Shown piece after piece: positions 7,752-22,337 of a stretch of 64,000 nucleotides of DNA; within the stretch, counting starts at the first letter, position 1; every line of letters starts with the position of its first letter. The translations under genes and the position numbers were made by a program. The stretch is taken from the IMG/VR virus record IMGVR_UViG_3300035156_000206, positions 1-64,000 of that record; one strand, 5' to 3'. The notes under the pieces were generated by a model. The model was not told where the DNA came from and ran no database searches. It saw only the letters and a list, made by a program, of their open reading frames with translations.

Positions 7752-7758
7752 ACACTAT

Positions 7759-7949: not shown

Positions 7950-8213
7950 GAAGATTCAACTAGAGCTACTGCTGATGCAGGACTTAGGTAGCTACTCCCA
8001 GTCGTACACCAGCCTTCGAGTCCATCTCCGCTGACTCGCGCTCGATCCGGCATCCCCTGTCAGGGCCCTTCAACTGATTGGCTGCATGAGTGGTCTCAGT
8101 GTTCACGAACTGGTGCTCTATGCGCGGCACTCAACGAGCCGCAGAACGCGCGTTCATTAGTACTAAGCCCTACAGGCTGACAGGCCTGTTCACTCACTTC
8201 TAGTTGAACCTTC
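7950..8213 (-). ncRNA. Candidate 264-nt multi-helix RNA
   Basis: 15-bp closing helix GAAGGTTCAACTAGA/TCTAGTTGAATCTTC; CCTGTCAG/CTGACAGG; several hairpins; no credible ORF. Confidence 0.7.
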
Positions 8214-8322
8214 TTTATGAGCATGTCTCTATATAATGGCATGCGCATAAAGAAGATCCCTCTTCTTCCTAGTTTCCGTTCTAGGTTATGGGGCACTCCC
8301 CATTCGGTAACTGCAAGTTATT

Positions 8323-8475
8323 TGGTACCGGGGGCAGGCCTCGAACCTGCAAAAAAGCAAACTCAACACGGCCGTGCCTTGTTCGCCCTTACAACCCATG
8401 GCCTCCCCACTCACCTAGTCTAGCTTCACTGAGCAGGTACTAACACAGGGCGTCTACCACTTTCGCCACCCCAGC
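8323..8475 (-). ncRNA. tRNA-Leu-like RNA with about 60 extra nt in the anticodon/variable region
   Basis: GCTGGGG/CCCCGGT acceptor, Leu-type D-arm GGCGAAAGTGGTAGACGC, GCAGG-TTCGAGG-CCTGC T-arm, ACCA; 153 nt. Confidence 0.75.
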
Positions 8476-8483
8476 ATAACTCT

Positions 8484-8645
8484 TTAGTCGACGAGGTCAC
8501 CCGCGTCAACAAAACTTTCACCCCAACGAACCATCAGGCCAAGCAGGAAGCCAACAACGGCACCGATAACAGGCTCTGCCCAGACATAATGTCCAACGAC
8601 GGCACCGAGAGCAGTACTCAACACCAACAGCAAAAATGTCAACAT
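8484..8645 (-). CDS. Small membrane protein, 53 aa
   Basis: hand-translated MLTFLLLVLSTALGAVVGHYVWAEPVIGAVVGFLLGLMVRWGE...; AAGGAG RBS. Confidence 0.65.
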   Translation of the reverse strand: MLTFLLLVLSTALGAVVGHYVWAEPVIGAVVGFLLGLMVRWGESFVDAGDLVD

Positions 8646-8661
8646 GCACTACTCCTTAAAA

Positions 8662-9059
8662 TGGGTCCCCCTTTCGATGACAGGGACTAGTGAACCTTTC
8701 GGCTCAGTAGCGGGGGATTATTTCAACCCTGCAAAGTTAGTTAGGCGTAAGCCGCTACTTTGAATTGTGAGTCGTTTGCATTTACATGCTTGCATCTTTT
8801 CGCCTTACGGCCGAGGATCGCTTCTCGTGTTGTCAACCTACGGTTATCTCACCACGTCGAAACCAGGTCGCCCCCATCAGCTGCACTTTCAGGTCTATGT
8901 CTGGTGTACCAGTCCTGAGAATTGATGTTATCTCATCTTCGAAAGCGCAGTTGGTGGAGGCGGCGGGAATCGAACCCGCGTCCGCAATGCCTTCACTTTG
9001 GCATCTGGATAGGTCTTACCCTACCCCACAACAATGTATCCGTTGATTTCTCAACTGAT
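8662..9059 (-). ncRNA. ssrA: Circularly permuted (two-piece) tmRNA
   Basis: acceptor piece ending GGTTCGATTCCCGCCGCCTCCACCA at 8952 is transcribed before GGGGGCGACCTGGTTTCGAC at 8875; tag ANDSQFKVAAYA at 8741-8779; outer ends approximate. Confidence 0.9.
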
Positions 9060-9065
9060 GAAGCC

Positions 9066-9094
9066 ATTATATAGACTTCTTCAGTTGAAGTCAA
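9066..9094 (-). promoter_or_regulatory. sigma70-type promoter of the tmRNA/ncRNA operon
   Basis: TTGACT-17-TATAAT inside inverted repeat. Confidence 0.8.
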
Positions 9095-9103
9095 CAGTTA
9101 ATT

Positions 9104-9439
9104 TCACAAGAGCTGATCAGCCAGCTTGACCAACTCGGCACGGTCCAGTTCAAACTCCGGACGCAGACGCTCCTGTTTCGACGATTGTGCCTCAGGCCAG
9201 TATGCCAGCTCATGAGGAGTCTTCATGGTCGAATGGTGAATCCCAGCCAAGCGGTTCCACTTCAACTCGGTTGGATGGAAGACCGAGATGATCGCATGCG
9301 ACTGGAAGTCATACGAGTCGCTCTTGATCGAGATGGACAACTTGTGCCCCTTCATTTCGAAAACTTGATGCAGCGTCAATGACTGACGCGCTTTAAGAAT
9401 TTCGTCCTGAATCATTTTGATCTTGGATGCTTTTGCCAT
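9104..9439 (-). CDS. Hypothetical protein
   Basis: 111 aa; downstream of repeat promoter, AAGGAG. Confidence 0.8.
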   Translation of the reverse strand: MAKASKIKMIQDEILKARQSLTLHQVFEMKGHKLSISIKSDSYDFQSHAIISVFHPTELKWNRLAGIHHSTMKTPHELAYWPEAQSSKQERLRPEFELDRAELVKLADQLL

Positions 9440-9455
9440 TTTGTTCTCCTTGGGT

Positions 9456-9503
9456 TTCGTCAGTTGATATAGCTTATTATACTGACTTTTGGAAAAATGT
9501 CAA
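9456..9503 (-). promoter_or_regulatory. Conserved early promoter+leader repeat
   Basis: TTGACA-17-TATAAT...AACTGACGAAA. Confidence 0.9.
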
Positions 9504-9955
9504 CTGGCTTTCCAAGGGTTAGCTTTGGGAATCACTTCGCCATTCTTGACCTTGTAGAACTCGCTACCTTCCTGGCGGTACAGTGGACTGACCTTGGCGT
9601 CAGCTATTTCAGCATTCGCTAAATCGTCCCAGAGAGCTTCCAGGTGCTCGTAGTAGTTCTTCCGGTGATGCTTGCGGTACAGCCGGTTGACGTCTTCCAT
9701 CGTGAAGCCGTGCTTCCGCATGTACGGACCCAACTGGTCAATTGGGTCGCCACCGTCGCAGGCGTAGCCGAGGGCATTATCGGCAGCCTGATAGAGAGCC
9801 TGCAACTTCAGGTCATTGATGGCCTTGCGTTCAGCAGCGGTCTGCCTCTTAGGCGCATCATAGCTTTCGCGCCACGCTTCCACTCCCGATTGGTTCAGGT
9901 TGCGGAAGCGTTTGTAGGTGCCCGATTTATTTGGGACTTGAACGGATGAGCTCAT
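9500..9955 (-). CDS. Hypothetical protein
   Basis: start moved to MSSSVQ, ATGA overlap with upstream stop. Confidence 0.75.
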   Translation of the reverse strand: MSSSVQVPNKSGTYKRFRNLNQSGVEAWRESYDAPKRQTAAERKAINDLKLQALYQAADNALGYACDGGDPIDQLGPYMRKHGFTMEDVNRLYRKHHRKNYYEHLEALWDDLANAEIADAKVSPLYRQEGSEFYKVKNGEVIPKANPWKAS

Positions 9956-10146
9956 GGCGCAGTGTAGGTGAACAAGCACATTGCTTGTTGTTGAAGGACG
10001 GAACGACCACGGTCGCAATTGTTGATCTTGGTGACTGCCGCAATGGCAACCAAAGGATCGTCAAACGCGACGGTGATAGTATGGACAGCAACCTGACCAC
10101 CATTTGGGGTCATGGTAGTGGTCACCAGGATTTGGAATTGGCTCAT
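9952..10146 (-). CDS. Hypothetical protein
   Basis: 64 aa; ATGA overlaps on both sides. Confidence 0.65.
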   Translation of the reverse strand: MSQFQILVTTTMTPNGGQVAVHTITVAFDDPLVAIAAVTKINNCDRGRSVLQQQAMCLFTYTAP

Positions 10147-10715
10147 GCCCAGATCCCCTTGCGCAGGTTGTATTCGTACGTCGTCGCACCTGGCTTCGAC
10201 AACTGGAGTTCTTTCATGAACAGCTCGATGATCTGGTGCTTGTCAGGCATGTTCGCAATGTTCTGCTTGTACAGTGCGATACAGCGGTCTTTCTTCGACA
10301 TGCCACTCGAACGAGCGATGCGTGGCTTCTTGGCTGTGGTACCGAGTTCTTCAGCCGCAATGACTGCTTCAGCGTGCTTCTCGGCAATCACGTCAGGATT
10401 GACCCATGGGTTCTTTGCGAGGAACTCACCAGCCTTCTTCTGCGCCAGAGCAATGGCTTGGTCAATCTCCATGTACTCTTTCATGTTGTAGAAGCGGACC
10501 GATTCCTGGATCAGGTAGCCAAACACCAATTCGGCAACCTTAACATCCTTCGTTTCCACATCCTGCTCCGTGAGCTCCTTGATGTAGGCATCGAAGTTGC
10601 ACTTCAGACCTGCAGCACGCTCAATCAGGTTGTCGCGGACGAAGTACTGTGCCGAAACAAAACTGTCAGTTGGAATGCCCATCGCTTTGATACGTTCAAT
10701 GATTACTGGTACCAT
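10143..10715 (-). CDS. Protein with C-terminal repeat-family domain
   Basis: start moved to MVPVII after AAGGAG; LSKPGATTYEYN motif; promoter at 10753-10780. Confidence 0.8.
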   Translation of the reverse strand: MVPVIIERIKAMGIPTDSFVSAQYFVRDNLIERAAGLKCNFDAYIKELTEQDVETKDVKVAELVFGYLIQESVRFYNMKEYMEIDQAIALAQKKAGEFLAKNPWVNPDVIAEKHAEAVIAAEELGTTAKKPRIARSSGMSKKDRCIALYKQNIANMPDKHQIIELFMKELQLSKPGATTYEYNLRKGIWA

Positions 10716-10821
10716 GATGACTTCTCCTTCGTCGTTGGATTCAATATAGACAATTATACTCACTTTTGGAAAAATGTCAACAGTTGCTTTCCAAATAAAT
10801 AAAGCATCATAGGAGCACACA

Positions 10822-11073
10822 ATGGCAATAGAACCATCCGGCATCATATATTTGTTGAAGAAGATCGAGGTAGCGGCAGATATCGAAACGACACTGGCAG
10901 AGATTTATATCAACCTGCCAACATGCATCAATCGCGCAATTGGAACCCTCCAGTGTACTCAATTAGAAAACGAGTACCGAGGGGTCATGCAGAAACTGAA
11001 GGTCGACTTTGAGTTCGACCTTCATCAAGCTTTCAAAGACCAGGTTGGAAAGATCCTGGCCCGTCCACGTTAA
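10822..11073 (+). CDS. Hypothetical protein, probably late
   Basis: 83 aa; AGGAG RBS; TAAATA at 10796-10801. Confidence 0.65.
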   Translation: MAIEPSGIIYLLKKIEVAADIETTLAEIYINLPTCINRAIGTLQCTQLENEYRGVMQKLKVDFEFDLHQAFKDQVGKILARPR

Positions 11074-11606
11074 TGGACTGTGGTGTTCGGCGGCACTGAA
11101 GCTTCTGGCTCACCATTCTCGGCCCGCTCCTGAGCCGCCCGTCCGGCCATCATCAATGATACGATGGCTGCGACGAGTGGATGCTGCTCGCGCTCCTCTT
11201 CATCATCGTCACCATGAACCATTTGGCAACCAGGGCACCAGCCTTCAGGCTTGTCTTCATCGCCGGCCTTGGTTTTGATCTCGGCCTTCTTGCGAGCCAC
11301 GAATTCGTCAACAGCACCCTTCGTGATGATCTTGTGCTCTTCCAGGATCACGAGCATCTCGCCCATGACTTCGGACACGCCAGCAATCAAGCCAAGTGGC
11401 ATCGCAATTTGTGCGTGCCCGATTTGGTTCATGGTAAGGCCAGGTGGCGCCTGTTCCAGGATGTGTTCCATCGCATCAGCAAACTTCTCATGCAACGCAG
11501 CGGCCCCGGCCGCAACATGCAAGATGCGTTCTTCTTTTGACATACCAGCGAGGAACTCCTCGTGGTCCTTTTTCTGCTCAGCTTGCTTCTCTTTGGTCGT
11601 TGCCAT
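11070..11606 (-). CDS. Hypothetical protein
   Basis: 178 aa; GACGAAAGGG leader; promoter near 11637-11664. Confidence 0.8.
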   Translation of the reverse strand: MATTKEKQAEQKKDHEEFLAGMSKEERILHVAAGAAALHEKFADAMEHILEQAPPGLTMNQIGHAQIAMPLGLIAGVSEVMGEMLVILEEHKIITKGAVDEFVARKKAEIKTKAGDEDKPEGWCPGCQMVHGDDDEEEREQHPLVAAIVSLMMAGRAAQERAENGEPEASVPPNTTVH

Positions 11607-11737
11607 TTTATTCCCTTTCGTCTAAGTGATGTGTTCATTATAGACAGAATTTGTGTAAAGTCAACAGTAATATTGAGATAGCATTATTAAGCAAAAGCTA
11701 TTATAATGAGGGAACTATACAACTTCGGGAGTTTCCC

Positions 11738-11992
11738 ATGTCGCATGCTCTAGTGACCCTCATTGATGAGGTTTTGAAAGACGCTGAGGTTCATGATGTT
11801 GAGGTGTCAATCCAAGTCGACACCGGATCGAAGACGATGGGTGCATCTTATAAGGACGATGTTGGGATGTGCCGCTACTACGTCAATGATATCGATGCCC
11901 TGTGGTATGAGATCCAGAAGGAACTGGAAGGCGAACAAACCTCAATGATCGACGCTTTTTGGTCAATCTTGAATACCGTATATAAGATTTAA
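11738..11992 (+). CDS. Hypothetical protein
   Basis: start moved to MSHALV after GGGAG. Confidence 0.7.
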   Translation: MSHALVTLIDEVLKDAEVHDVEVSIQVDTGSKTMGASYKDDVGMCRYYVNDIDALWYEIQKELEGEQTSMIDAFWSILNTVYKI

Positions 11993-12130
11993 ATGAAAAA
12001 CCATTGAGAAATCTCAAGGGCCTTAGCAGATTACCGTTGATTTCTGATATTTCCACCGTATGATTAAGTTATCAACTCTACCGCACTCAATAGTGGGAGC
12101 GGGGAAGTTACTAACCCAAGGAGAATCAAG

Positions 12131-12463
12131 ATGGCAACCTCGAATCGTAATCACGGCTCTAAAGCACCATTGGTCCCTGAGCCACAGCACACCGGCCGCA
12201 ACGCGGAATCGTTCTCGACGCAGCAAGGCAGCAACAAAGCAGCCATTGCCCGCAAAATCTTTAACGAGATCGGTACCGACCAGCCACGCAAGGCCGTCAT
12301 CGAGCGCTTCCAGTCCGAAGCACACCTGACCCCTGCAGGCGCGGCAACCTACTACCAGAACATGAAAAAAGAAGCCGGCCTCGTCGCAGTTGGCGGCCCA
12401 GGCAACACACGCGCGCAAAACAATGCGCCGGCTGAAGGCGGCGCAGCAACGGCCAAGAAATAA
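12131..12463 (+). CDS. Small basic protein, repeat-family domain
   Basis: 110 aa; LTPAGAATYYQN motif; AAGGAG RBS; terminator follows. Confidence 0.8.
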   Translation: MATSNRNHGSKAPLVPEPQHTGRNAESFSTQQGSNKAAIARKIFNEIGTDQPRKAVIERFQSEAHLTPAGAATYYQNMKKEAGLVAVGGPGNTRAQNNAPAEGGAATAKK

Positions 12464-12509
12464 TTCACTTACCGGTGATTATCTGGCCCCCTTTATGGTG
12501 GCCATGTTT

Positions 12510-12536
12510 GGGGAGACTTCGGTCTCCCCCTTTTTT
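12510..12536 (+). terminator. Rho-independent terminator
   Basis: GGGGAGAC-TTCG-GTCTCCCC then T6. Confidence 0.9.
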
Positions 12537-12545
12537 ATCCCTACT

Positions 12546-12593
12546 GTTGACTTTCTTCCAAATGTCAGTATAATGAAATCATCGACTGACGAA
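12546..12593 (+). promoter_or_regulatory. Conserved early promoter+leader repeat, plus-strand copy
   Basis: TTGACT-17-TATAAT GAAATCATCGACTGACGAAAGGGAG. Confidence 0.9.
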
Positions 12594-12606
12594 AGGGAGA
12601 TACAAA

Positions 12607-12972
12607 ATGAAATTTAGTGACCTCACAAGCGATGTTGCACGGGTAGATTATCTGAAGGCTCAGCTGACCCAGGATGACCGGTTGATCATGCGTTGCCTAT
12701 TGGCAATCTACAATAACCAGACCTTGGATGAACAAAGCTCCAAGACTGTTAACAAGCACAATGGCATCGGCTTTAAGTCGATGGATGCGAAGATCCTCAC
12801 GGAGTATGTACAGACGGCAGAGCGTCGTCGTGTGACTGAGGCTCTGGAGAACAAGAATGTTGAATTCTGCTTGGAGCGTGTACTGTCCGAGAAGCAGGCA
12901 GCATTCCTGCGCCGTGCAATGCCAAAGTATGCCCGTCAACTTTTGAAGGTAATCAAGGAGAAACAAAAATGA
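12607..12972 (+). CDS. Conserved phage hypothetical protein
   Basis: 121 aa; LLAIYNNQT.DEQ...HNGIGF pattern. Confidence 0.8.
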   Translation: MKFSDLTSDVARVDYLKAQLTQDDRLIMRCLLAIYNNQTLDEQSSKTVNKHNGIGFKSMDAKILTEYVQTAERRRVTEALENKNVEFCLERVLSEKQAAFLRRAMPKYARQLLKVIKEKQK

Positions 12973-13250
12973 ACATCACTACCCAGGTAAGTCGTTTGGA
13001 TTCCAAATCTCGCAAAGTTGGTGGCGAGATGCAGCAAAGCACTGCCCACACCATCCAGGTTGATGGCAAAACCTTCCTTCATGGAGGACCTAAGGTAATT
13101 GTGACTGAGTACCCGAATGGGAAGACGACGATCACGGCCACCGAAGCATATGGTCGCATCTACTTGGTAGATGGGAAGGTACATCAATTTGCCTCCGTAC
13201 AAGCAGCAGCAGAAGCGCTGGTTGCAAAGGAGCTGAAACAAACTCCTTGA
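12969..13250 (+). CDS. Hypothetical protein
   Basis: 93 aa; ATGA overlap; AAGGAG. Confidence 0.75.
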   Translation: MNITTQVSRLDSKSRKVGGEMQQSTAHTIQVDGKTFLHGGPKVIVTEYPNGKTTITATEAYGRIYLVDGKVHQFASVQAAAEALVAKELKQTP

Positions 13251-13293
13251 TCTTCAGGACCTACCTCCTCTACAATGCTCCACTTAGTTCCAT

Positions 13294-13301
13294 TATAAAT
13301 A
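13294..13301 (+). promoter_or_regulatory. T4-like late promoter
   Basis: exact TATAAATA ahead of a gene-free hairpin-rich stretch. Confidence 0.6.
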
Positions 13302-13719
13302 TGGGACTACAGTGGATGTTTGTTTTTCGGGCATTATGTTTCCACTATAAAAACATAAAGAACGACGGGCCTTGGAGTAGAGCCCAATAACTACTAACCA
13401 GGTGGGGGATGTGCGAGCGACCCAATCCAACCGCTGTCGTAGCGGCGATTACAAACAGAAATGGGCAGACGGTTTATACATGATTTAGTTCATGCCGGCG
13501 TGACGGTCTCGACGATACAGAGACATGCTGATAAAACACCTTACGACCAAGATTGATCACTTCCAATCTTGAACTAGTTCTTTAGGACAGATTCCTTCTT
13601 CCAGGTTGAATTAATTTAAATTATTCCTTCCTGTTTTTGAAAAGCTCTGACCGGGTCCTAGGCTCATGTCCTGTACCCCTACGGGTTGACAAAAACCTAA
13701 GACTTCAGTATGATGCAAA

Positions 13720-14085
13720 TCAATCCTCCATGTCCTTCCATACCCCGAACTCCACTACCGAGATAGGTTGGCCGTACTCAGTCGCCGATTTGTGCCAGTG
13801 CTCGATCAGACTAACAGGCACATCAGGATATGCAGCCACTACCTGCTCAATAATCAAACTATCAAACAAGTCCTGACGCATCTGGGTCAGATACAGATTG
13901 GCCGTATCCAGAGCCAATGCCTCATCGTCAAATGCCTCACAGGTGTAACCCTTGGCCTGACCGAATGTGCTGGAGGACGACACACGATATGTGGTCCCAG
14001 CTGCACCCTCATACTTCGTGCAAGTAACATGCATCACGGTGTCACCAAACACGTGACTAAATTGCAACAGGGTTGTGGTTTTCAT
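13720..14085 (-). CDS. Hypothetical protein
   Basis: 121 aa; repeat promoter, AAGGAG. Confidence 0.8.
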   Translation of the reverse strand: MKTTTLLQFSHVFGDTVMHVTCTKYEGAAGTTYRVSSSSTFGQAKGYTCEAFDDEALALDTANLYLTQMRQDLFDSLIIEQVVAAYPDVPVSLIEHWHKSATEYGQPISVVEFGVWKDMED

Positions 14086-14095
14086 CTTTTACTCC

Positions 14096-14143
14096 TTCGT
14101 CAGTTGATGTAGTCATTATACTGACTTTTGGAAATTTGTCAAC
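14096..14143 (-). promoter_or_regulatory. Conserved early promoter+leader repeat
   Basis: TTGACA-17-TATAAT...AACTGACGAAGGAG. Confidence 0.9.
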
Positions 14144-14153
14144 GGGATGGGAA

Positions 14154-14336
14154 TTAGACGTTGTCCGCAGGACCAATGATCTGGAAGCCACCTTCAGATA
14201 CCTCAAACTCACATTCGCCATCTGTCAGGTCATCCGAGTAGCTAATGTAGTTGACCACGGAGTCCAACTCCTCATCCGTGCAACCATCCAACAACGCCTT
14301 CAGCTCACGCAGGGTCTTGAAAGTTCCTTCAGCCAT
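14154..14336 (-). CDS. Small acidic hypothetical protein
   Basis: 60 aa; repeat promoter, GGAG. Confidence 0.7.
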   Translation of the reverse strand: MAEGTFKTLRELKALLDGCTDEELDSVVNYISYSDDLTDGECEFEVSEGGFQIIGPADNV

Positions 14337-14347
14337 GATATTCTCCA

Positions 14348-14391
14348 GTAGTTGATGTAGTCATTATACTGACTTTTGGAAATTTGTCAAC
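14348..14391 (-). promoter_or_regulatory. Early promoter repeat (variant leader)
   Basis: TTGACA-17-TATAAT GACTACATCAAC. Confidence 0.85.
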
Positions 14392-14509
14392 GGGAACAAA
14401 TACCAAACGATTTAAACGCGTTATACGCGATTTGTTTTACAATCGGTAAGCAAATGCGATCGACGAAGGAAAACCGTGCAAACGTTGATCTGAACGGTTT
14501 CCGATGTGT

Positions 14510-14785
14510 TTACGTGAGGAGGACAGATAGCGGATCGATGGTCTCGATGTTCAGCTTTGTGAACACGCGTTCCATGAGCTCATCGGTGAGGTCTGGTTGA
14601 TCGGCTCCCCACATGCGGTACACTGTCCAGAAGCGGCCATTGCTTTCTTTCAGGCCGTTGATCAGCCACTCGCAGATCTGGTGCATCAAGTAGCGAGCTT
14701 CTGGTGTGTACTCTGGTGCACCGATCAGTCCGGTCTGGACATCACGGAACACCGCAATCACGTCGTCCTTGCAAGTGGCGATCAT
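14510..14785 (-). CDS. Hypothetical protein
   Basis: 91 aa; ATGA overlap. Confidence 0.75.
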   Translation of the reverse strand: MIATCKDDVIAVFRDVQTGLIGAPEYTPEARYLMHQICEWLINGLKESNGRFWTVYRMWGADQPDLTDELMERVFTKLNIETIDPLSVLLT

Positions 14786-15342
14786 GCTGTTGCCTTATCG
14801 TCTGGGTTGACGTATACTTGCATCAGCAGTTCCCGCGGTTGCATCTTGACCTTTGGGAACAGGGCATTGTGTCCCATGTTGACCACGACCGGCTTGCCAC
14901 AGTGTTCGCCACCAGCAACCACGACGCCGCTTTCGCCAGTATCAATTGTCTTCACGACCATGCCGGCCCACATTGGGAACCGAGGCGGAAGCCACTTGAC
15001 AATATCGGCGGTCCATTCGAACATCTGCAGTGCGGTGATCTTGCCCGCATCATGTGCGTGGAAGTAGTACTCGGCCAGCTCTGGAATGGTGACGCACTCA
15101 TCGACGCCCATGCCATAGTAGCCCATGCCGTACAAGGCATTCAGCCGTTCCGTAACCGATGTGGTCTGGAGGAAGATGTAGGCATCGATTACGTGGAACA
15201 GCTTCTCGTCCGAAAAGAAGTTGCCACGCCACGGCAGACCTTTGATTTGGTCCGAATTGGTGATCACGAGCTCGCCGATTGCATCCAGGCGACGTCGCAT
15301 CTCAGCAGCATTGCCGGTCAGTAGTATGGTCTTGTCAGTCAT
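14782..15342 (-). CDS. Hypothetical protein
   Basis: 186 aa; repeat promoter, GGAG. Confidence 0.8.
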   Translation of the reverse strand: MTDKTILLTGNAAEMRRRLDAIGELVITNSDQIKGLPWRGNFFSDEKLFHVIDAYIFLQTTSVTERLNALYGMGYYGMGVDECVTIPELAEYYFHAHDAGKITALQMFEWTADIVKWLPPRFPMWAGMVVKTIDTGESGVVVAGGEHCGKPVVVNMGHNALFPKVKMQPRELLMQVYVNPDDKATA

Positions 15343-15355
15343 TTTGTATCTCCGT

Positions 15356-15403
15356 TTCGTCAGTTGATGTAATCATTATACTGCTTTTTCCAAAATAGTC
15401 AAC
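15356..15403 (-). promoter_or_regulatory. Conserved early promoter+leader repeat, back-to-back with a + promoter
   Basis: TTGACT-17-TATAAT; shared palindrome GTCAACTGTTGAC. Confidence 0.9.
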
Positions 15404-15433
15404 TGTTGACTTTTCTGAGAATCCAAGTATAAT

Positions 15434-15518
15434 AGACTTACCGTGACCATAGGAGAGGGGAGGTATGGCGATACGGTTCGCAACGGGACACAACAAAAGA
15501 GGACCGAAGTCCTCTTTT
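15434..15518 (+). ncRNA. Three-copy small RNA/peptide cassette, copy A
   Basis: TTGACT-16-TATAAT then AGACTTACCG-N7-AGGAGAG-N4-GGTATGGCGATACGGTTC; terminator 15495-15518. Confidence 0.6.
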
Positions 15519-15520
15519 GG

Positions 15521-15859
15521 TTAGCGGATGATCAGGACCTTCAGGATTGGCTGGTTGCAATATTCTGCAGGCGAATCCAAATCGACCTCCTGGTCTTCGT
15601 CATCCATTGCACCGCGCAGGGCACGTTCAGCTTCTTCGACCTTCTCTTCATCCAGGGTCTGGAACTTCTCTGCGTTCGAGCACCATGCAACTGACTCGAC
15701 CGTAATCTGACCAATCTCCTCAGCCACTTCCGTCCGCCAGTAATCGCCCAGGGGCCGAGCAAAGTGAATTGGATTAGCCAACTCGTCTGGGTCCATTTGG
15801 GCCAACAGATCCATTAGTTGCTTACCGGTGATGGAACCACTTTCGCTGTGACGTGCCAT
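15521..15859 (-). CDS. Hypothetical acidic protein
   Basis: 112 aa; repeat promoter near 15893-15921, AGGAG. Confidence 0.8.
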   Translation of the reverse strand: MARHSESGSITGKQLMDLLAQMDPDELANPIHFARPLGDYWRTEVAEEIGQITVESVAWCSNAEKFQTLDEEKVEEAERALRGAMDDEDQEVDLDSPAEYCNQPILKVLIIR

Positions 15860-15925
15860 TTTAGTTCTCCTGTTTGTTTAGTCAATATAATCATTATACT
15901 GACTTTTGGAAAAATGTCAACGCTG

Positions 15926-16411
15926 TTACTCTGCGTTCCACGAACTGGTTGGCAGACCCACAAATTCGATTTCGTCGCCAATGCGCATATAGCGTTGGAT
16001 GTGGTATTGGTTCATCATGTGATCAAACCACAGGCAGGTGTTGGTACCAACATCAATACCAACAACTTCAAATTCACGGCTGGCGCCGGCCGAGCGTTGC
16101 AGGAAGTAGTCAAGGTGGTCGAATGACTCCACCCGGCCGAGGTCGTACACATGGTCCCCCTGAGCTTCCAGGGCACAGAAGGTCAGCAGTGGTACAGCAT
16201 CATTCTCGCAGCGGATGACCCCGTGCCAATCCTGAGACAACTCAACCGCGCTGATGCCCCATTCACAACCTGGCACATCATGCCAAAGAATTTGGTTCGT
16301 TTCCTGCTTCACGGCAATAGGTTCCATGCCCGTATAACCAGCAGCTTCGAATGCCTGACCTATCATGGCACAGGTCATTTCCTTTTCTACTTCCAGGCGC
16401 TTGAGTTTCAT
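15926..16411 (-). CDS. Hypothetical protein
   Basis: start moved to MKLKRL after repeat leader. Confidence 0.8.
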   Translation of the reverse strand: MKLKRLEVEKEMTCAMIGQAFEAAGYTGMEPIAVKQETNQILWHDVPGCEWGISAVELSQDWHGVIRCENDAVPLLTFCALEAQGDHVYDLGRVESFDHLDYFLQRSAGASREFEVVGIDVGTNTCLWFDHMMNQYHIQRYMRIGDEIEFVGLPTSSWNAE

Positions 16412-16421
16412 TTTATTCCCT

Positions 16422-16469
16422 TTCGTCAGTTGATGCAATCATTATACTGATTTTTCCAAAATTGTCAAC
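16422..16469 (-). promoter_or_regulatory. Conserved early promoter+leader repeat, back-to-back with a + promoter
   Basis: TTGACA-17-TATAAT...AACTGACGAAAGGG. Confidence 0.9.
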
Positions 16470-16526
16470 TGTTGACTTTATTGGCAAATTGTATTATAGT
16501 GTTTACATCAACAATAGGAGATCACA

Positions 16527-16922
16527 ATGCATGTAACAGAACATACGTTGAATGGTGAACGCACCATGACGCCATTCGTCCAGAAGCTGGTTAATGAACT
16601 GGGTGAATGCTGCCGGGAGTACCGCCTCACAGAAGAGGACGACAAGGTCACCTTTGTGTTCCCTTACATGAAGCGTCAGGGCGTGATCATGTACGATGGC
16701 GAGCTGATGTTGCTGGCAGGAGCGTACATCATCAGTTCCGATGACGACACTGAACACTACTTCATCCTTGTTGCTGGCACTATGGACGGGGACTCGTTCT
16801 TGTTCACTCCAGTCGACGAGGTACAAGAAGTCGTTGGGATGGATCTCGGCAACTTGCCTGTCCTCTACATCCAGCAACACGATATCGGCTTCGTCGATAT
16901 GCTGGCTCCACTGGTTAACTAA
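16527..16922 (+). CDS. Hypothetical acidic protein
   Basis: 131 aa; AGGAG RBS; divergent promoter. Confidence 0.75.
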   Translation: MHVTEHTLNGERTMTPFVQKLVNELGECCREYRLTEEDDKVTFVFPYMKRQGVIMYDGELMLLAGAYIISSDDDTEHYFILVAGTMDGDSFLFTPVDEVQEVVGMDLGNLPVLYIQQHDIGFVDMLAPLVN

Positions 16923-16958
16923 ACCAGCGTTGATTATCTCCCTGAAATGGGAGATAAT

Positions 16959-17038
16959 AGACTTACCGGTGAGCAGGAGAGTCGAGGTATGGGGATTCGG
17001 TTCACCCCTGGCAACAAGGAGCAACTGCTCCTTGTTGC
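16959..17038 (+). ncRNA. Three-copy small RNA/peptide cassette, copy B
   Basis: TTGATT-17-GATAAT then AGACTTACCG-N6-AGGAGAG-N4-GGTATGGGGATTCGGTTC; 12-bp hairpin 17011-17038. Confidence 0.6.
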
Positions 17039-17335
17039 TTACTTCTCCTGCGTCTCGGTAACGAACCGCCAGCCTTCCAGCTTAGGAAAGCGTTCAAGCG
17101 TCGCATCGGTCGGCTTCAAGTACCAGTCGGTCTGGTTGGCACCATACAGCGCGGTCGGGGGCCGCTTCTCATGCTGATGCACATACCATTCGGTGGTCTG
17201 CCCACCCAGGTCGACAACCTTCAATATCATGTCTGCCGACATATCAATGCCTTCCTGGTCGGCACCAAAGGACCGGACGCGGTGTTTGTGATCTGTACCA
17301 GAAGCAGCAGTGGCAAGGTTGAGTGTCGTGTTCAT
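17039..17335 (-). CDS. Hypothetical protein
   Basis: 98 aa; GGAGG RBS. Confidence 0.75.
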   Translation of the reverse strand: MNTTLNLATAASGTDHKHRVRSFGADQEGIDMSADMILKVVDLGGQTTEWYVHQHEKRPPTALYGANQTDWYLKPTDATLERFPKLEGWRFVTETQEK

Positions 17336-17391
17336 AGTACCTCCAGCAGATGGAAAAAAGGGAGCCCTCAGGCCCCCTCCTTGTTGGCTTA

Positions 17392-17658
17392 TTAGGCCGT
17401 AGCGCCCTGGCCGATCAGACCAGCTTTGCGCTTGAAGTTCTGCAGGTACGTTGCAGCACCTTTCGGGGTCAGGTCCGCAGCTGCAACAACCAGCTCCAGG
17501 ATCGCCGAACGCTTCGGCACTGGCTGCTCGCTGTAAGCCGCCTGGAAGATTTCAGCAGCCTTGGCTGCCTTCGAAACAGCCACCGGGGTGCTGATCACTT
17601 CAGCAGCGGTGCTCACTGCAGCGGTTGCGACGACTGCTTTGTTGGAGTTCTTTTTCAT
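17392..17658 (-). CDS. Small Ala/Lys-rich protein, repeat-family domain
   Basis: 88 aa; LTPKGAATYLQN motif; promoter near 17718-17745. Confidence 0.8.
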   Translation of the reverse strand: MKKNSNKAVVATAAVSTAAEVISTPVAVSKAAKAAEIFQAAYSEQPVPKRSAILELVVAAADLTPKGAATYLQNFKRKAGLIGQGATA

Positions 17659-17873
17659 GATAGTTTCTCGCTTTCTTGGTTATTCGCATCAGCATTATTG
17701 CTTCAGTCGATATATTCATTATACTTACTTTTCATCTTTTGTCAACAGTTTCTTTTTCGCTGCCACCGGTTCCTGTTAACACTTCTTCCCAACCGATGAG
17801 ATCAGTATACTTGCTTTTCAACTAAAGTCAACGGCATTCCCTTGTTGACTTCTATGGGAAGCCTCCGTATAAT

Positions 17874-17957
17874 AGACTTACCGGTCCCTAGGAGAGAGGT
17901 GGTATGGGGATTTGGTTCAGGCGGGGGAACCTGGACCAAGGACCACGGCCTAGGTGA
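17874..17957 (+). ncRNA. Three-copy small RNA/peptide cassette, copy C
   Basis: TTGACT-17-TATAAT then AGACTTACCG-N6-AGGAGAG-N4-GGTATGGGGATTTGGTTC; 3' end uncertain. Confidence 0.55.
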
Positions 17958-18029
17958 GGTTGCACCAGGACCAAGGTGCTGGCCTATGTTCAACCTGAGC
18001 CAGGACCTAGTGGTGCAGGCTCAAACCAT

Positions 18030-18385
18030 GGTCCTCCACAAATGCCCGACCCCCTGGTCCTACCAGAACCAAGATCCACAATTGGGTTTTGACAACCTGA
18101 AACTAGGTCCTCCACAAATGCCCGACCCCCCTGTACCAAACCACAATTGGGATTTTGAAGACCAAACCACAATTGGGAAAACATGGTACATTGCAATTGG
18201 CCAACCCCCTGCACCAAACCACAATTGGTCAAATGGCACAATTCCACAATTGGGATTTTGGTCGATTTCAAATGGGGGTGGACGGACCGGTCGACAATTG
18301 ACAACTGGTTGTTTCAGAACCACAACAGGAGGATGAGGTACAACTAGGGATGGCACGATATGAACGAACCAGATCCACAAATGGG
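18030..18385. repeat. Iteron-like direct repeats, putative origin or packaging/terminal signal
   Basis: CCACAATTGG at 18076, 18141, 18167, 18219, 18244; 24-bp GGTCCTCCACAAATGCCCGACCCC at 18030 and 18106. Confidence 0.85.
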
Positions 18386-18460
18386 GAATTAGGAAATCAG
18401 AATGGGACACGCAACATGACTTGTGAACCAAGACCATGGTGGTTTGAAACTAGACTGGTA

Positions 18461-18538
18461 GGGGTCGGGGGGTGAGCCTACTGAAATACAGGGGGGTCGG
18501 GGGGGTACGTAATTGCGCCTAACCACGGGGGTCGGGGG
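18461..18538 (+). repeat. Second GGGTCGG/G-tract cluster
   Basis: GGGTCGG at 18462, 18494, 18529 within long G runs. Confidence 0.85.
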
Positions 18539-18708
18539 CCTAGTATTTGGTGTTGGTACGAATCACTTGTCTCTTTCAATCTTGTGCTCGTACCAACTTG
18601 ACATCAACACCGACATATTATTCCAATCATCTAGCGGGTGGTAGGTACCGGACATCAGCGCATATTGAATTAACGTGCTGCATCTAGCCCATATGTTGAT
18701 GTCTGGTA

Positions 18709-18942
18709 TTACGCTACTGCCGAGCCACCTTCACGGGAGGTGACCATGCCGGCCTTGCGACGGCAATTCTGGTAGTAGGTCGAAGCACCCTTCTCGGTCA
18801 GGCCAACTTCTTTCTGCAGGCGCGCCAGGACGATCTTGCGACTGAACCCGATGGTATCAGAGAAGATCTTGGCTGCTTTCACAACTTTACTTTCGCCACG
18901 TGGGGTACGGATTGTGGTCGAATTGGTTGTGGGCTTAGTCAT
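18709..18942 (-). CDS. Small basic protein, repeat-family domain
   Basis: 77 aa; LTEKGASTYYQN motif; GGAG RBS; TTGACT-17-TAGAAT at 19033-19061. Confidence 0.8.
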   Translation of the reverse strand: MTKPTTNSTTIRTPRGESKVVKAAKIFSDTIGFSRKIVLARLQKEVGLTEKGASTYYQNCRRKAGMVTSREGGSAVA

Positions 18943-19132
18943 GGTGGTACTCCTTCAGGGGTTAAATAACAGGGTTTGGGTTATCTACCAGTGGAGGGAA
19001 CGAACGTGTTCTTCCTCCACCGCTAAGTAACCATTCTACTTACTACAAAAACAAAAGTCAAGGAAAACATCGAGTACCTGTTGATTAAAATCAAAATTTA
19101 CTGTAATAAACATTTCCTCTCGGAAACATCCT

Positions 19133-19582
19133 TCAGGCCATCATACCTTGACGCTTCATGTACTTAGTAACAAGCACAATGTGTTTACACGCACCTGGTA
19201 TTGCATCTCCCGGGTTCAAAGGAGCCCTCTTGGGCCTCTGCCTCAAATGGTCCGGGACAGGCACATACTTCGGTCTGTGCATTCCGAACAGCGCATGCAC
19301 CTTTCGGTTTGCCTCGCTGAACCAGAACCTAAAACTAGGACAATTGCATCGGACCACAACATTGTTCTCCTCACTGACAGGTCCTTCGACCTGGTTGAAT
19401 TGAACAACGACCTTATAGACCTTCTTGTCCGGAGATGCTACCTCCGCCCGAACAATCTTGGTCTTCACACCAAGCATGTCCGTAACATGAAAATCAAATA
19501 TGGCATAATCCTCAATCACCGCCCTATTAAATACTCCAGGCTGCAACGCTTCACCGCCTGCAACAAGATCACTAAACTTCAT
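19133..19582 (-). CDS. SWIM zinc-finger protein
   Basis: CNC...CKH pattern (VRCNCPSF...GACKHIV); promoter near 19618-19646. Confidence 0.75.
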   Translation of the reverse strand: MKFSDLVAGGEALQPGVFNRAVIEDYAIFDFHVTDMLGVKTKIVRAEVASPDKKVYKVVVQFNQVEGPVSEENNVVVRCNCPSFRFWFSEANRKVHALFGMHRPKYVPVPDHLRQRPKRAPLNPGDAIPGACKHIVLVTKYMKRQGMMA

Positions 19583-19714
19583 CTGTTCACCTGCTAATGT
19601 AATACACTATGATGATCATTATACTGATTTCTTGCTTAAAGTCAACGCTGTTCTCTTAAAAACCTAACTAATATACAATACGAATTCTCAATCGAAATTT
19701 GGAACCATACTATT

Positions 19715-20059
19715 ATGATAACCACCTCCCCGACTACCATCGATCGCTTCACAGCCATTGCAACAGAAGTCATCCAGACACTTACCAACACAGGCGTCCT
19801 CCGACTCCTTAAAGATGCGGCTGGGACCGACCCCCTAGATGCAACATCTGCTGACGGCCAACGCATCATCCGAGCCATGGCCACTAAGATCTATGATGGT
19901 GCAATCAAAGATATGAACCAACATCTCGCCCTGGACCAACCACAACCGTCCGACCCCGATGCAGACCTAATCGCCAAACAAGAACTGGACCGACAGTGGC
20001 AAGAGCAACAAGCACTACTGGGCCCCAAGCCAGGACCGGCGCGCCGGACTATCAGCTAA
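19715..20059 (+). CDS. Hypothetical protein
   Basis: 114-aa ORF. Confidence 0.65.
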   Translation: MITTSPTTIDRFTAIATEVIQTLTNTGVLRLLKDAAGTDPLDATSADGQRIIRAMATKIYDGAIKDMNQHLALDQPQPSDPDADLIAKQELDRQWQEQQALLGPKPGPARRTIS

Positions 20060-20140
20060 TAAACCTCGTTGACAAATCTGTGTAATCCTCTCTATAATAG
20101 AATTAATCGATCGGCGAGATTAATTCCATAGGGACTGACT

Positions 20141-20980
20141 ATGCATCACAATTACGAAGAACCCAGCGTCACAGCGGAACACATTGTTCAGGCCAAAAAC
20201 CTGAACATCCTTCCACTGACCATGGAACAAGCAATTATCATCCAAGGCTTCACAGGCCTCAATATCGTACCACCAGAACTGTTCGACCAGGACAAAGCCG
20301 AGCGCCTGAACGGTGGCATCGAGTTCGACACGACCCAGACACAATACCGAGAAGACTTCCTCCGGCTGGTACGTGGCGTCTACCAGAATGAAATGGACGA
20401 CTACCCAGCACTGACCAAAATGGTCTACCGCCTCATCGAACAGAAAATGGACAACGATCCATTTGCCTGCTGGGACACACGGGTCGACATCCTGATCGCA
20501 ACACACCTGAACCACAAGACCCAGGCATCCCTGCGCGTCTCCATTGAACTGGAACACCAAGGTACTATCGAGTTCACAGAACGCCCAGGGCCAACTCCAC
20601 AAACATGGATTGTGATCAACAGGCCCGATCCTACCGCAGACCAACTGAACGTCGCCATCACCAATGTCGTCGAACAGATGCATGGCGACCAGCCACTGTC
20701 GGGGACATACGAAATGATCCTCCCCATGAGCCTTCCGACCCGGGTGGAACAATCCTTCTCCGACCAGGTAAAGGCCCTGTACAAATTGGACAGCCTCGAG
20801 ATCACCAGGGGTCGGTTCACAAGGCACCAAACCAAGTTGACATTGACCAAGGGGTCGGACCTGGGAATTAACGACGGGGGGTCGGGGGCACTGGAACCAG
20901 CATTCACCGGTACCCTCAATGAGGTGCGCATCGCCTCCCAGGGTCGGGAGCACGATGAGCGAGGTTGGCAGCCTAAGTAA
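20141..20980 (+). CDS. Hypothetical protein
   Basis: 279 aa; TTGACA-18-TATAAT at 20069-20098. Confidence 0.8.
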   Translation: MHHNYEEPSVTAEHIVQAKNLNILPLTMEQAIIIQGFTGLNIVPPELFDQDKAERLNGGIEFDTTQTQYREDFLRLVRGVYQNEMDDYPALTKMVYRLIEQKMDNDPFACWDTRVDILIATHLNHKTQASLRVSIELEHQGTIEFTERPGPTPQTWIVINRPDPTADQLNVAITNVVEQMHGDQPLSGTYEMILPMSLPTRVEQSFSDQVKALYKLDSLEITRGRFTRHQTKLTLTKGSDLGINDGGSGALEPAFTGTLNEVRIASQGREHDERGWQPK

Positions 20981-21932
20981 TCATCGGCAGTAGGTTGAAG
21001 AGGTCGGAGAACAGGCCGTGAATGTTCTGGACTATGTACTGTGTGTCGGATCCATGGTACGAGGTACAGTTCATAGCCACGGCCTGTCGGGCCTCCATCC
21101 TAAGGGTCGGGTCGTACTTCCACATTCTGATGATTCGGAAGCCAGACCGTATGGCGATATGGTTCAGCTCCGACTTGCCAAGGTTGCAGATGTCCACCAC
21201 GTACACATTGGCGGGGTCGGACGGGTACTGGGCACAATACATCACAGCAACATTCTCCAACAAACCTGGTAATGGATCGTGACCTAAAAAGATCGACCAA
21301 CCACACCAGTCCGACCCATACACCTCATCAGGCCTCCATGGTAGATCACTATGGGCATAGGTCGCGCGCCACTTCAACCATTCAGGATGGTCCCTCAATC
21401 CCAGGCGCGATACAAACTTCACAGCCTCCATGAACGGCCTGTACCCGACCCCCTTGGGGAACGGAACCAAGTTGTCGATATTTCCCAGGGCCGACGGCCT
21501 ATGTTGCTTCTTCTGTCCCAAGAACTTAACCCAACCTTCCCATTCATCCTTATAGTACCTATCCGGTTGCTTCGGGATCCTATGGGGTCGGGGGGACAGA
21601 TCCTTATGAGCCTCATGGTACTGATCCATGGTCAATAGGTTCAATGGTGCAATAAGGTCCTTAGCCTCTTGGTACGACATAAAGGTTGTACCTAACCAAT
21701 CTGGCCAACCCGTCCACCGCTCCTTATAGGCTAGGTCAGGACGCTTGGGAATGTCCCCAGGCAACTTCGGACCATCACAGAACTGTTCCCAATCCTTTTG
21801 GTTCTCCAGACCTTGCCTGTGCACATATTGTAGGGCGAGCCTATACGAACGGTGCCTAAGTTTTGGTCGTCCCGGACCAGTTTGTTTCTTAGGTCTTCCA
21901 GCCTTAACAATTCGTTCCTTGGTGTTTTCCAC
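20973..21932 (-). CDS. AT-hook-like plus integrase-repeat-unit DNA-binding protein
   Basis: two GRP motifs; three repeats Y/F..A...L.L....W...P..PD..Y...W.GW..L G; TAAATA at 21970-21975. Confidence 0.8.
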   Translation of the reverse strand: MENTKERIVKAGRPKKQTGPGRPKLRHRSYRLALQYVHRQGLENQKDWEQFCDGPKLPGDIPKRPDLAYKERWTGWPDWLGTTFMSYQEAKDLIAPLNLLTMDQYHEAHKDLSPRPHRIPKQPDRYYKDEWEGWVKFLGQKKQHRPSALGNIDNLVPFPKGVGYRPFMEAVKFVSRLGLRDHPEWLKWRATYAHSDLPWRPDEVYGSDWCGWSIFLGHDPLPGLLENVAVMYCAQYPSDPANVYVVDICNLGKSELNHIAIRSGFRIIRMWKYDPTLRMEARQAVAMNCTSYHGSDTQYIVQNIHGLFSDLFNLLPMIT

Positions 21933-22127
21933 TTTTACCCCTGCTACGGTTACTGTTGTACATACGGGCTATTTATTGTGGACAAAATGTCTGGATTTGT
22001 ACTATAATGAACAATGGGTTAGGTTGTCCCCACTATACTGGTTTTTCGGCAACTTTTCAACAAATCTTCTTGACTGGTTGCAGCTATGTGTTGTACGTTA
22101 ATCGTTTTGTCTCTTTTGGGGAGTATC

Positions 22128-22337
22128 ATGGGTTCTGGTTTCTTGGATGGGTTGATGCGTGACTTGTTGATAAGTTTGCTAGCGGTTGTGTTCGCGGTTG
22201 GGTTATTGAGTGCAGGCGGTATGTATCTCTACATGAGGAGTTCTATCGATACGCCAGAGGTAGCTGCTAGTAAGTTGGCTAAGGAGCGTGCTCGTGTTAT
22301 GGAGGAATGTATTAAGGCTCGTATGGTGTGTAAGTAA
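22128..22337 (+). CDS. Small membrane protein, C-x5-VC family
   Basis: TM helix then CIKARMVC. Confidence 0.7.
   Translation: MGSGFLDGLMRDLLISLLAVVFAVGLLSAGGMYLYMRSSIDTPEVAASKLAKERARVMEECIKARMVCK

What the first reader, a model, noticed from the sequence alone, without database searches (positions are those of the whole stretch)
15434..17957. Three-copy promoter-driven cassette: ~85-nt sRNA or tiny peptide family
Seen: at 15434, 16959 and 17874 a sigma70 promoter is followed by AGACTTACCG-N6/7-AGGAGAG-N4-GGTATGG(C/G)GAT(A/T)(C/T)GGTTC, with two short variable windows; copies A and B end in strong hairpins. The ATG opens MAIRFATGH (19 aa), MGIRFTPGN and MGIWFRRGN (17 aa), with synonymous Ile and Gly codons. 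Each copy has several GGA motifs. Competing inferences: peptide effectors, CsrA/RsmA sponges, SD decoys that titrate the anti-SD sRNA or ribosomes, or nonstop mRNAs feeding the phage tmRNA (the terminator in A precedes its stop codon).
Basis: partly seen in the sequence, partly recalled or inferred. Interest (0 to 1): 0.75.

Follow-up and report, generated by a model that had tools for sequence, protein, structure and literature searches.

The report
Three tiny early RNA units
A giant soil phage carries three copies of a strong promoter followed by a conserved ribosome-binding start and a 17-19 codon frame, two ending in terminators; they probably make ~80-base translated or regulatory RNAs, but no expression data or relatives exist to show what they do.

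Summary
The repeat is real. There are exactly three copies in the 292-kb genome (0 expected by chance). All lie on the + strand, in gaps between leftward early genes of a XacN1-like jumbo myovirus from a biocrust metagenome. Each copy has a sigma70-type promoter, a ~25-nt leader with AGGAGAG, an ATG and a conserved block GGTATGGSGATWYGGTTC, then GGN-MAC at codons 8-9. Promoter spacers and the two short windows are at random-level identity, so the blocks look selected, not recently copied. A and B carry a strong hairpin inside the frame, which predicts RNAs of about 80 nt that end at or before a stop codon. B's frame is 62 codons to its stop, not 17. C runs into a repeat-rich non-coding stretch. 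New: a fourth copy of the ATG block (17/18) lies at 21148-21165, same strand, inside and antisense to gene 20973-21932. No conserved RNA fold, Rfam family, relative or RNA run was found. The CsrA-sponge and anti-SD-decoy readings are not supported. Best guess (0.33): short ribosome-loaded regulatory RNAs whose ATG block pairs with that mRNA. Close rivals are micro-peptides, non-stop or attenuator designs, and PeSL-like promoter cassettes.

The parts
15406..15433 (+). Promoter of copy A (TTGACT, 16 nt, TATAAT). Its -35 abuts the -35 of the leftward promoter 15402-15375 as a palindrome.
15434..15491 (+). Conserved module of copy A: initial transcribed AGACTTACCG, a 7-nt window, AGGAGAG, a 4-nt window, the GGT-ATG block, and GGA-CAC at codons 8-9.
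15465..15524 (+). Reading frame A: 19 codons, with stop TAG at 15522-15524, after the terminator U-tract.
15495..15518 (+). Hairpin and U-tract of copy A. It is bidirectional and is shared with the convergent gene 15521-15859(-).
16930..16958 (+). Promoter of copy B (TTGATT, 17 nt, GATAAT; 9/12). A 7-bp inverted repeat sits in its spacer. B may also be reached by read-through from gene 16527-16922(+).
16959..17015 (+). Conserved module of copy B.
16989..17177 (+). Reading frame B: 62 codons to the stop, open through the hairpin. Only about 19 codons lie before the predicted RNA end.
17011..17038 (+). 12-bp hairpin of copy B. The pyrimidine-rich tail is present only on the + strand.
17845..17873 (+). 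Promoter of copy C (TTGACT, 17 nt, TATAAT).
17874..17930 (+). Conserved module of copy C.
17904..17957 (+). Reading frame C: 17 codons, with TGA at 17955-17957. No terminator follows it.
17930..18600 (.). Repeat-rich stretch with no predicted gene, into which copy C fires. It holds CCACAATTGG x5, GGACC-containing 11-mers at 35-nt spacing, and CCCGACCCCC / GGGGGTCGGG sets in inverted orientation.
21148..21167 (+). Fourth copy of the ATG block: 17/18 to the consensus, preceded by AGAC-CGT and lacking the AGGAGAG. It lies inside and antisense to gene 20973-21932(-).

Best explanation
The three copies are paralogous early mini transcription units. They face against the flow of the surrounding leftward early genes. 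Host RNA polymerase should start about 7 nt after the -10 hexamer, near the A of ACCG. In A and B it should stop at a hairpin about 80 nt later. The kept part is the 5' module of the RNA: a strong Shine-Dalgarno, an AUG 9 nt downstream and the next 15-27 nt. No protein body is kept. I read them as abundant, ribosome-loaded small regulatory RNAs with a possible dual function. The working end would be the AUG block GUAUGGSGAUWYGGUUC. The same block occurs once more, 3.2 kb downstream on the same strand, inside a leftward gene. The mRNA of gene 20973-21932 therefore carries its exact complement (RNA A 16/17, C 17/19, B 15/18). Pairing would either silence that mRNA or block ribosome entry on the cassette RNAs. 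Translation of the 17-19 codon frame runs to the very 3' end of the RNA in A and B, and would set how much of the block is free and how long the RNA lives. Shown by sequence: the repeat, the promoter and terminator motifs, the frame geometry and the fourth copy. Inferred: transcription, the RNA ends, translation, pairing, and which RNA regulates which.
For: There are three exact copies and none expected by chance. The blocks are 100% identical, while the promoter spacers and the N6/7 and N4 windows are at roughly random identity. This is read directly and points to selection on discrete motifs rather than a recent duplication. Conservation covers non-coding bases (GGT before the ATG) and the third positions of codons 2, 4 and 5, so it acts at the nucleotide level. 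A promoter plus a hairpin predicts discrete RNAs of about 80 nt for A and B. The fourth block copy at 21148-21165 compares with an expectation of 0.01 per window even with 2 mismatches allowed. The 18-mer occurs once, by chance, in all of IMG/VR. That fourth copy is close by, on the same strand and antisense to a gene. The same phage holds another RNA that is complementary to the conserved leader of its main early genes, so pairing with start-region modules appears to recur here.
Against: No transcript data exist; no RNA run was listed. A conserved AGGAG at the correct distance from a conserved AUG is what a real gene start looks like, not a typical seed. Gly8 kept through GGA/GGC/GGG suggests selection on a peptide. 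B pairs poorly with the proposed target (three mismatches). C has no terminator. No conserved fold was found. The proposed target rests on a single site. No relative carries the cassette, so nothing can be tested by comparison.
Confidence: 0.33

Rival explanations
1. Micro-peptide genes. The products are 17-19-residue basic peptides sharing the N-terminus M-(A/G)-I-(R/W)-F-x-x-G-(N/H), which act on a host or phage target.
For: A complete start region with the same layout as ordinary genes of this promoter class. Similar frame lengths of 19, about 19 and 17 codons. Gly8 is encoded by three different codons, and Ile3 is synonymous.
Against: B has no stop before its hairpin, and the stop of A lies after the U-tract. 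Codon-usage score is -0.22 and -0.23 per codon for A and C. Synonymous sites in codons 2-5 are frozen, while the rest of the peptide cannot be aligned. The fourth block copy, which lacks a Shine-Dalgarno, is left unexplained.
Confidence: 0.22
2. Translation-linked RNA devices. Either they are designed non-stop messages, whose ribosomes reach the 3' end and call in tmRNA (the phage encodes one at 8650-9044). Or they are leader frames whose ribosome melts the hairpin and lets polymerase read on, antisense to the convergent early genes (A, B) or into the repeat region (C).
For: The hairpin lies inside the frame in A and B, and the frame is open across the first downstream hairpin in all three copies. 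This would explain why the start region is kept and the peptide tail is not. ArfA mRNA of E. coli (my own knowledge) is a precedent for a hairpin-truncated frame coupled to tmRNA.
Against: Nothing sensible lies downstream in the same orientation for A and B. C has a normal stop and no terminator. No alternative antiterminator fold was found. Open frames of this length are not rare: about 0.07 jointly by my estimate.
Confidence: 0.15
3. PeSL-like promoter/start cassettes with no product of their own. They would be portable promoter-leader-start modules serving as recombination points or gene-birth sites in an ORFan-rich early region. The tiny frames would simply be whatever lies behind them.
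For: The region is packed with a second, far more abundant promoter-leader cassette. That cassette is also found in metagenome contigs L217 and L223, which share no protein similarity with this genome. All neighbouring genes are database orphans. B has a stem-loop in its promoter spacer, as PeSLs do (PMC2839356).
Against: In the main cassette family conservation stops at the Shine-Dalgarno. Here it continues 15-27 nt past the ATG. Neutral positions are saturated while the blocks are intact, which argues for a function of the transcribed part. No joints at these cassettes appear in the source reads.
Confidence: 0.17
4. A DNA-level site. The 17-18-bp block is bound by a phage protein (regulator, replication or packaging factor). 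It occurs four times in one orientation within 5.7 kb, near a repeat-rich region and the GC-skew minimum.
For: Four same-strand copies cluster at 15.4-21.2 kb. One sits in a gene on the other strand, which does not matter for a DNA site. Iteron-like repeats lie at 17930-18600 and the skew minimum at 21.9 kb.
Against: The block has no dyad symmetry. In the three cassettes it always sits exactly on an ATG behind a Shine-Dalgarno. No candidate binding protein was identified.
Confidence: 0.08
5. A CsrA/RsmA sponge, or a decoy for the phage anti-leader (anti-SD) RNA.
For: GGA motifs occur at three to four times the expected frequency. Copy A alone shows some complementarity to the anti-leader RNA (z = -2.2).
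Against: Only 0-1 A-N-GGA motif per RNA, and no repeated GGA loops. No Rfam family matches. The anti-leader RNA matches CUGACGAAAGGAG, which the cassettes lack. B and C show no complementarity beyond shuffles.
Confidence: 0.04

Closest known systems
PeSL cassettes (promoter-early stem-loop) of T4-type phages (PMC2839356, PMC4122927)
   Same: Short repeated modules in an ORFan-rich early region. They comprise a strong sigma70-type promoter, sometimes a stem-loop within it, and end in a Shine-Dalgarno and start codon.
   Different: Here the conserved part runs 15-27 nt into the frame, the frames are only 17-19 codons, and the units face against the neighbouring genes. The phage is XacN1-like, not T4-like. 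Recombination between copies could not be tested.
Lambda OOP RNA and similar short phage antisense RNAs (my own knowledge)
   Same: A ~77-80-nt RNA with its own sigma70 promoter and intrinsic terminator, convergent with a neighbouring gene.
   Different: OOP overlaps its target in cis by about 55 nt. Here the cis overlap is only the shared hairpin, and the 17-nt complementarity is to a gene 3-6 kb away. OOP has no conserved ribosome-binding module.
Multi-copy seed-sharing small RNAs such as OmrA/OmrB or Qrr (my own knowledge)
   Same: Paralogous short RNAs with an identical 5' region and variable remainder, each with its own promoter and terminator.
   Different: The shared region here is a full translation start. 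Hfq dependence and targets are unknown, and one copy lacks a terminator.
ArfA-type non-stop message (my own knowledge)
   Same: A hairpin inside the reading frame that should leave the RNA without a stop codon. A tmRNA gene is present in the same genome.
   Different: There is no protein homology. Only B is clearly non-stop, A is borderline and C is not. Nothing shows that the peptides matter.

Membership tests
PeSL cassettes of T4-type phages | Strong sigma70-like early promoter | tested here: met
   11/12, 9/12 and 11/12 matches to the hexamers.
PeSL cassettes of T4-type phages | Stem-loop within or next to the promoter that terminates upstream transcription | tested here: inconclusive
   B has a 7-bp inverted repeat in its spacer. 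A and C have only the palindrome made by two abutting -35 boxes. Function was not tested.
PeSL cassettes of T4-type phages | The motif ends at the Shine-Dalgarno and start codon of a downstream ORFan gene | tested here: not met
   Conservation extends 15-27 nt beyond the ATG, and the downstream frames are 17-19 codons or lack a stop.
PeSL cassettes of T4-type phages | Recombination between copies shuffles the flanked genes among related phages | not testable with these tools
   No relative with this cassette was found. The other cassette family of this phage is shared with unrelated contigs.
Trans-acting small RNA family | Own promoter and intrinsic terminator giving a discrete short RNA | tested here: inconclusive
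   Predicted for A and B and absent in C. No RNA data exist.
Trans-acting small RNA family | Conserved seed complementary to a target mRNA | tested here: inconclusive
   One site, 21148-21165, antisense to gene 20973-21932. A pairs at 16/17, C at 17/19 and B at 15/18. No second target rises above background.
CsrB/RsmY/RsmZ-type sponge | Many A-N-GGA motifs displayed in hairpin loops | tested here: not met
   3-5 GGA motifs but only 0-1 A-N-GGA per RNA, no repeated loops, and no Rfam hit.
Leader-peptide attenuator (trp or pyrBI type) | Short leader frame overlapping a terminator | tested here: met
   In A and B the frame covers the hairpin.
Leader-peptide attenuator (trp or pyrBI type) | Regulated structural gene downstream on the same strand | tested here: not met
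   Convergent genes 15521-15859(-) and 17039-17335(-) follow A and B.
ArfA-type non-stop message | Transcript end upstream of the stop codon | tested here: inconclusive
   By sequence this holds for B, is borderline for A (the stop starts 8 nt after the stem) and does not hold for C. 3' ends have not been mapped.
Type I toxin-antitoxin | Small hydrophobic membrane peptide | tested here: not met
   The peptides are basic and hydrophilic. The convergent genes encode acidic soluble proteins.
nut/put-type antitermination site | Conserved RNA hairpin between promoter and terminator | tested here: not met
   The promoter-element-terminator layout fits. However, no conserved fold was found, and the native variable windows fold no better than random ones.

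The most novel reading that the evidence does not exclude
The phage runs an RNA network built on interchangeable translation-start modules. One RNA (promoter at 7933, minus strand) pairs with the shared leader of the many leftward early genes. A second class of start module, the three cassettes, is paired with a complementary site buried in gene 20973-21932. The cassette RNAs are deliberately non-stop, so their ribosomes are handed to the phage's own tmRNA. This would be a phage-built switch that couples early-gene shut-off to ribosome rescue.
Probability: 0.08. Interest if true: 0.8.

Novelty: new variant of a known kind. Interest (0 to 1): 0.45.

Why it matters
Early regions of giant phages are full of orphan genes and repeated control modules, and almost nothing is known about how they are regulated. 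If these units are short RNAs that act through a conserved start-codon block, two things follow. They would be a compact example of phage riboregulation that uses a ribosome-binding site as the recognition surface. Together with the anti-leader RNA in the same window, they would also give a testable model for how a jumbo phage times its early genes. If they turn out to be only promoter cassettes, they extend the PeSL idea beyond T4-like phages.

Tried and rejected
1. Relatives. The following all gave no cassette, so covariation could not be tested:
- megablast against phages;
- exact-pattern scans of IMG/VR, of metagenomes and of genomes (the one hit, L124, is a chance match in a coding region);
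- four named relatives;
- five long IMG/VR relatives searched with a sequence model.
2. Flanking proteins of 131 and 186 aa are orphans in 5.8 billion proteins and in viral contigs. No Pfam or PHROG family matches them.
3. RNA evidence. No RNA run was listed. Laying the DNA contigs of two biocrust runs showed no variation or joints at the cassettes.
4. Conserved fold. RNAalifold gives only a weak CUUACC/GGUAUG helix of -3.3 kcal/mol. A 5-bp helix ACCGN/NYGGU is possible in all four block copies, but the chance value is only about 0.06 by my count. Replacing each variable window with random sequence folds as well as the native one.
5. Rfam found nothing, at gathering or at relaxed thresholds.
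6. Other reading frames of the block are rejected. The minus-strand frame has a stop in C. The + strand GTG frame of A (15443-15694) has a stop in B.
7. Duplex energies against the proposed target and against the anti-leader RNA were too noisy to add anything.
8. The equivalent codons of the XacN1 homologue have no second copy in XacN1.
9. Frame-shifted reading from C into the 144-codon open frame downstream is rejected: that frame is made of DNA repeats and was not called as a gene by my codon-usage filter.
Full report
SETTING
The window is the first 64 kb of a 291,967-bp IMG/VR virus record with 48% G+C. The sequence is held by runs labelled biocrust metagenome. The record encodes a portal, a major head protein, a tail sheath, a DNA ligase and a topoisomerase. 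Its head protein is 62-65% identical to those of the Xanthomonas jumbo phages XacN1 and Xoo-sp13 and the Stenotrophomonas phages CM1 and RAS14. Bases 1-20,000 hold tRNAs, a permuted tmRNA and dozens of small, mostly leftward genes. Each of these genes sits behind a near-consensus sigma70 promoter.

The motif occurs at 15434, 16959 and 17874 on the + strand, with none expected by chance. There are no further full copies in the genome. The record is judged 84% complete, so copies could exist in the missing part. Promoter-like sites precede all three copies; B's is the weakest.

The copies align without gaps, apart from one base in the first window. The invariant parts are:
- AGACTTACCG
- AGGAGAG
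- GGTATGG-GAT-GGTTC
- GG and AC at codons 8-9, six bases after GGTTC

By direct comparison, the promoter spacers are about 25% identical on average, and the N6/7 and N4 windows are no better. Neutral positions are therefore saturated while the blocks are untouched. That is the footprint of selection on discrete motifs, not of a recent copy.

WHAT EACH BLOCK IS
AGACTTACC is not special to the cassette. Related CTYACC starts follow the -10 of other promoters that drive ordinary genes (at 290890, 291422, 482 and 282018, and at 20069 as AGAATTAATCG). It is probably the start-site region of one promoter class. The RNA would then begin near the A of ACCG.

The leader is about 25 nt long. AGGAG lies 9 nt before the ATG, the layout seen in ordinary genes of this phage. 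The cassette therefore looks like a genuine gene start. It differs from the abundant leftward promoter-leader family (GATTACATCAACTGACGAA-GGAG, at least 15 copies), where conservation stops at the Shine-Dalgarno. Here conservation continues into the frame.

FRAMES AND HAIRPINS
A has 19 codons, C has 17, and B has 62 to its stop.

In A, a stem of 6 G/C-rich pairs (15499-15514) is followed by UUUUGGUU. The TAG starts 8 nt after the stem, about where intrinsic termination usually occurs. Many transcripts would therefore lack a complete stop.

In B, a 12-bp stem (17011-17038) starts at codon 8 and has a pyrimidine-rich tail only on the + strand. It therefore serves the cassette RNA rather than the convergent gene. 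About 19 codons fit before the RNA end.

C has no terminator. It reads into 17930-18600, a stretch in which my codon-usage filter calls no gene and which is full of repeats.

IS IT CODING?
In favour:
- the complete translation start;
- similar frame lengths;
- Gly8 written as GGA, GGC and GGG;
- the synonymous ATA/ATT at codon 3.
Against:
- across codons 2-9 the variable sites fall 4, 3 and 4 on codon positions 1, 2 and 3, so there is no periodicity;
- third positions of codons 2, 4 and 5 and the GGT before the ATG are invariant;
- the codon-usage score is negative for A and C;
- B has no usable stop.
The minus-strand frame and a GTG frame were checked and fail because of stop codons.

IS IT A STRUCTURED RNA?
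No Rfam family matches. RNAalifold finds only a weak helix. Each copy can fold its 5' module into a hairpin of -10 to -13 kcal/mol. The pairings differ between copies, however, and random replacements of the variable window fold as well as the native sequence.

A FOURTH COPY OF THE ATG BLOCK
A profile search gave a marginal hit (E = 0.11) at 21149-21167. Measured against the consensus it is much stronger. GTATGGSGATWYGGTTC matches there with no mismatch. Only 0.01 matches per window are expected even with two mismatches allowed. The 18-mer occurs only once, by chance, in all of IMG/VR.

The site is on the same strand as the cassettes and 3.2 kb beyond C. It is preceded by AGAC-CGT and lacks the Shine-Dalgarno. 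It lies inside gene 20973-21932(-), which has a weak integrase-repeat Pfam match (below the curated cutoff) and homologues at 26-30% identity in the XacN1 group. The site falls in a part of the protein that is not conserved. All synonymous positions of that stretch agree with the cassette consensus, which argues that the nucleotide sequence itself is kept.

The mRNA of that gene is thus complementary to the cassette RNAs: A 16/17, C 17/19, B 15/18. A weaker fifth match (2 mismatches) lies outside the window at 266299-266282. It is sense within a 124-codon frame and may be chance.

Downstream of the promoter at 7933(-) lies an RNA containing CCUCCUCCUUUCGUCAGG. This is the complement of the main-family leader CUGACGAAAGGAG, so RNA pairing with start modules seems to be used in this phage. 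The cassettes lack that leader and show no consistent complementarity to the RNA, so the decoy idea fails.

GGA motifs are enriched but not in the CsrA context.

The main-family leader also turns up in two metagenome contigs that share no protein similarity with this genome. That is how PeSL cassettes of T4-type phages behave (PMC2839356, PMC4122927).

VERDICT
The feature is real, selected and specific to this phage as far as the collections reach. I rank the readings as follows.

| Reading | Confidence |
|---|---|
| Ribosome-loaded small regulatory RNAs acting through the ATG block | 0.33 |
| Micro-peptides | 0.22 |
| PeSL-like modules without a product | 0.17 |
| Non-stop or attenuator devices | 0.15 |
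| DNA site | 0.08 |
| Sponge or decoy | 0.04 |

None is shown. Transcript mapping and a pairing test would settle most of it.

Noticed in passing
window 7933-7690, minus strand (core about 7824-7806): Behind a consensus promoter lies an apparently non-coding RNA containing CCTCCTCCTTTCGTCAGG. This is the exact complement of the conserved leader CTGACGAAAGGAG carried by at least 12 early genes. It is a candidate trans-acting anti-leader / anti-Shine-Dalgarno RNA that could shut off the early genes together.
   Followed up: partly
window 1-20000, mainly minus strand (e.g. 1382, 2048, 2473, 9503, 14142, 15402, 16468): At least 15 copies of a promoter-leader cassette: TTGACA, a spacer ending in CCAAAAGTCAG, TATAAT, then GATTACATCAACTGACGAA and GGAG. 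About 50 nt of it (84-88% identical) also occur in metagenome contigs L217 and L223, which share no protein similarity with this genome. It behaves like a PeSL-type mobile regulatory cassette.
   Followed up: partly
window 17930-18600: A repeat-rich stretch with no predicted gene. CCACAATTGG occurs 5 times here and rarely elsewhere in the genome. GGACC-containing 11-mers repeat every 35 nt. CCCGACCCCC and GGGGGTCGGG sets lie in inverted orientation. The stretch is flanked by two small paralogous genes (17392-17658 and 18709-18942, both minus) that share KGA-x-TY-x-QN-xx-RKAG. It may be an origin, a partition site or a regulatory site.
   Followed up: partly
window 1-175: The record begins with about six GGGGTCGGG repeats, the same motif as at 18455-18540. 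The assembly may have broken in a repeat array, or this may mark a genome end or the boundary of a terminal repeat.
   Followed up: no
window about 21900-22130: The cumulative GC skew reaches its minimum at 21.9 kb, exactly where genes switch from leftward to rightward. A TGGACA-18-TATAAT promoter faces right there.
   Followed up: partly
window 7940-8480, minus strand: About 540 nt between the tmRNA gene and the anti-leader promoter have no convincing reading frame and no Rfam match. This may be another structured RNA.
   Followed up: no
G000 266299-266282, minus strand (outside the window): A weak fifth match to the cassette start. A purine-rich stretch is followed by ATG TTG ATT CGG TTC AGG TAA, a six-codon frame reading MLIRFR. 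It lies out of frame inside a 124-codon frame and may be chance (nhmmer E = 0.15).
   Followed up: no
window 20069-20143, plus strand: The promoter of gene 20141-20980 has a related start region (AGAATTAATCG). It is followed by an 8-bp terminal hairpin and CCATAGGGAC before the ATG. This shows that the cassette leader belongs to a wider class of rightward gene starts.
   Followed up: partly
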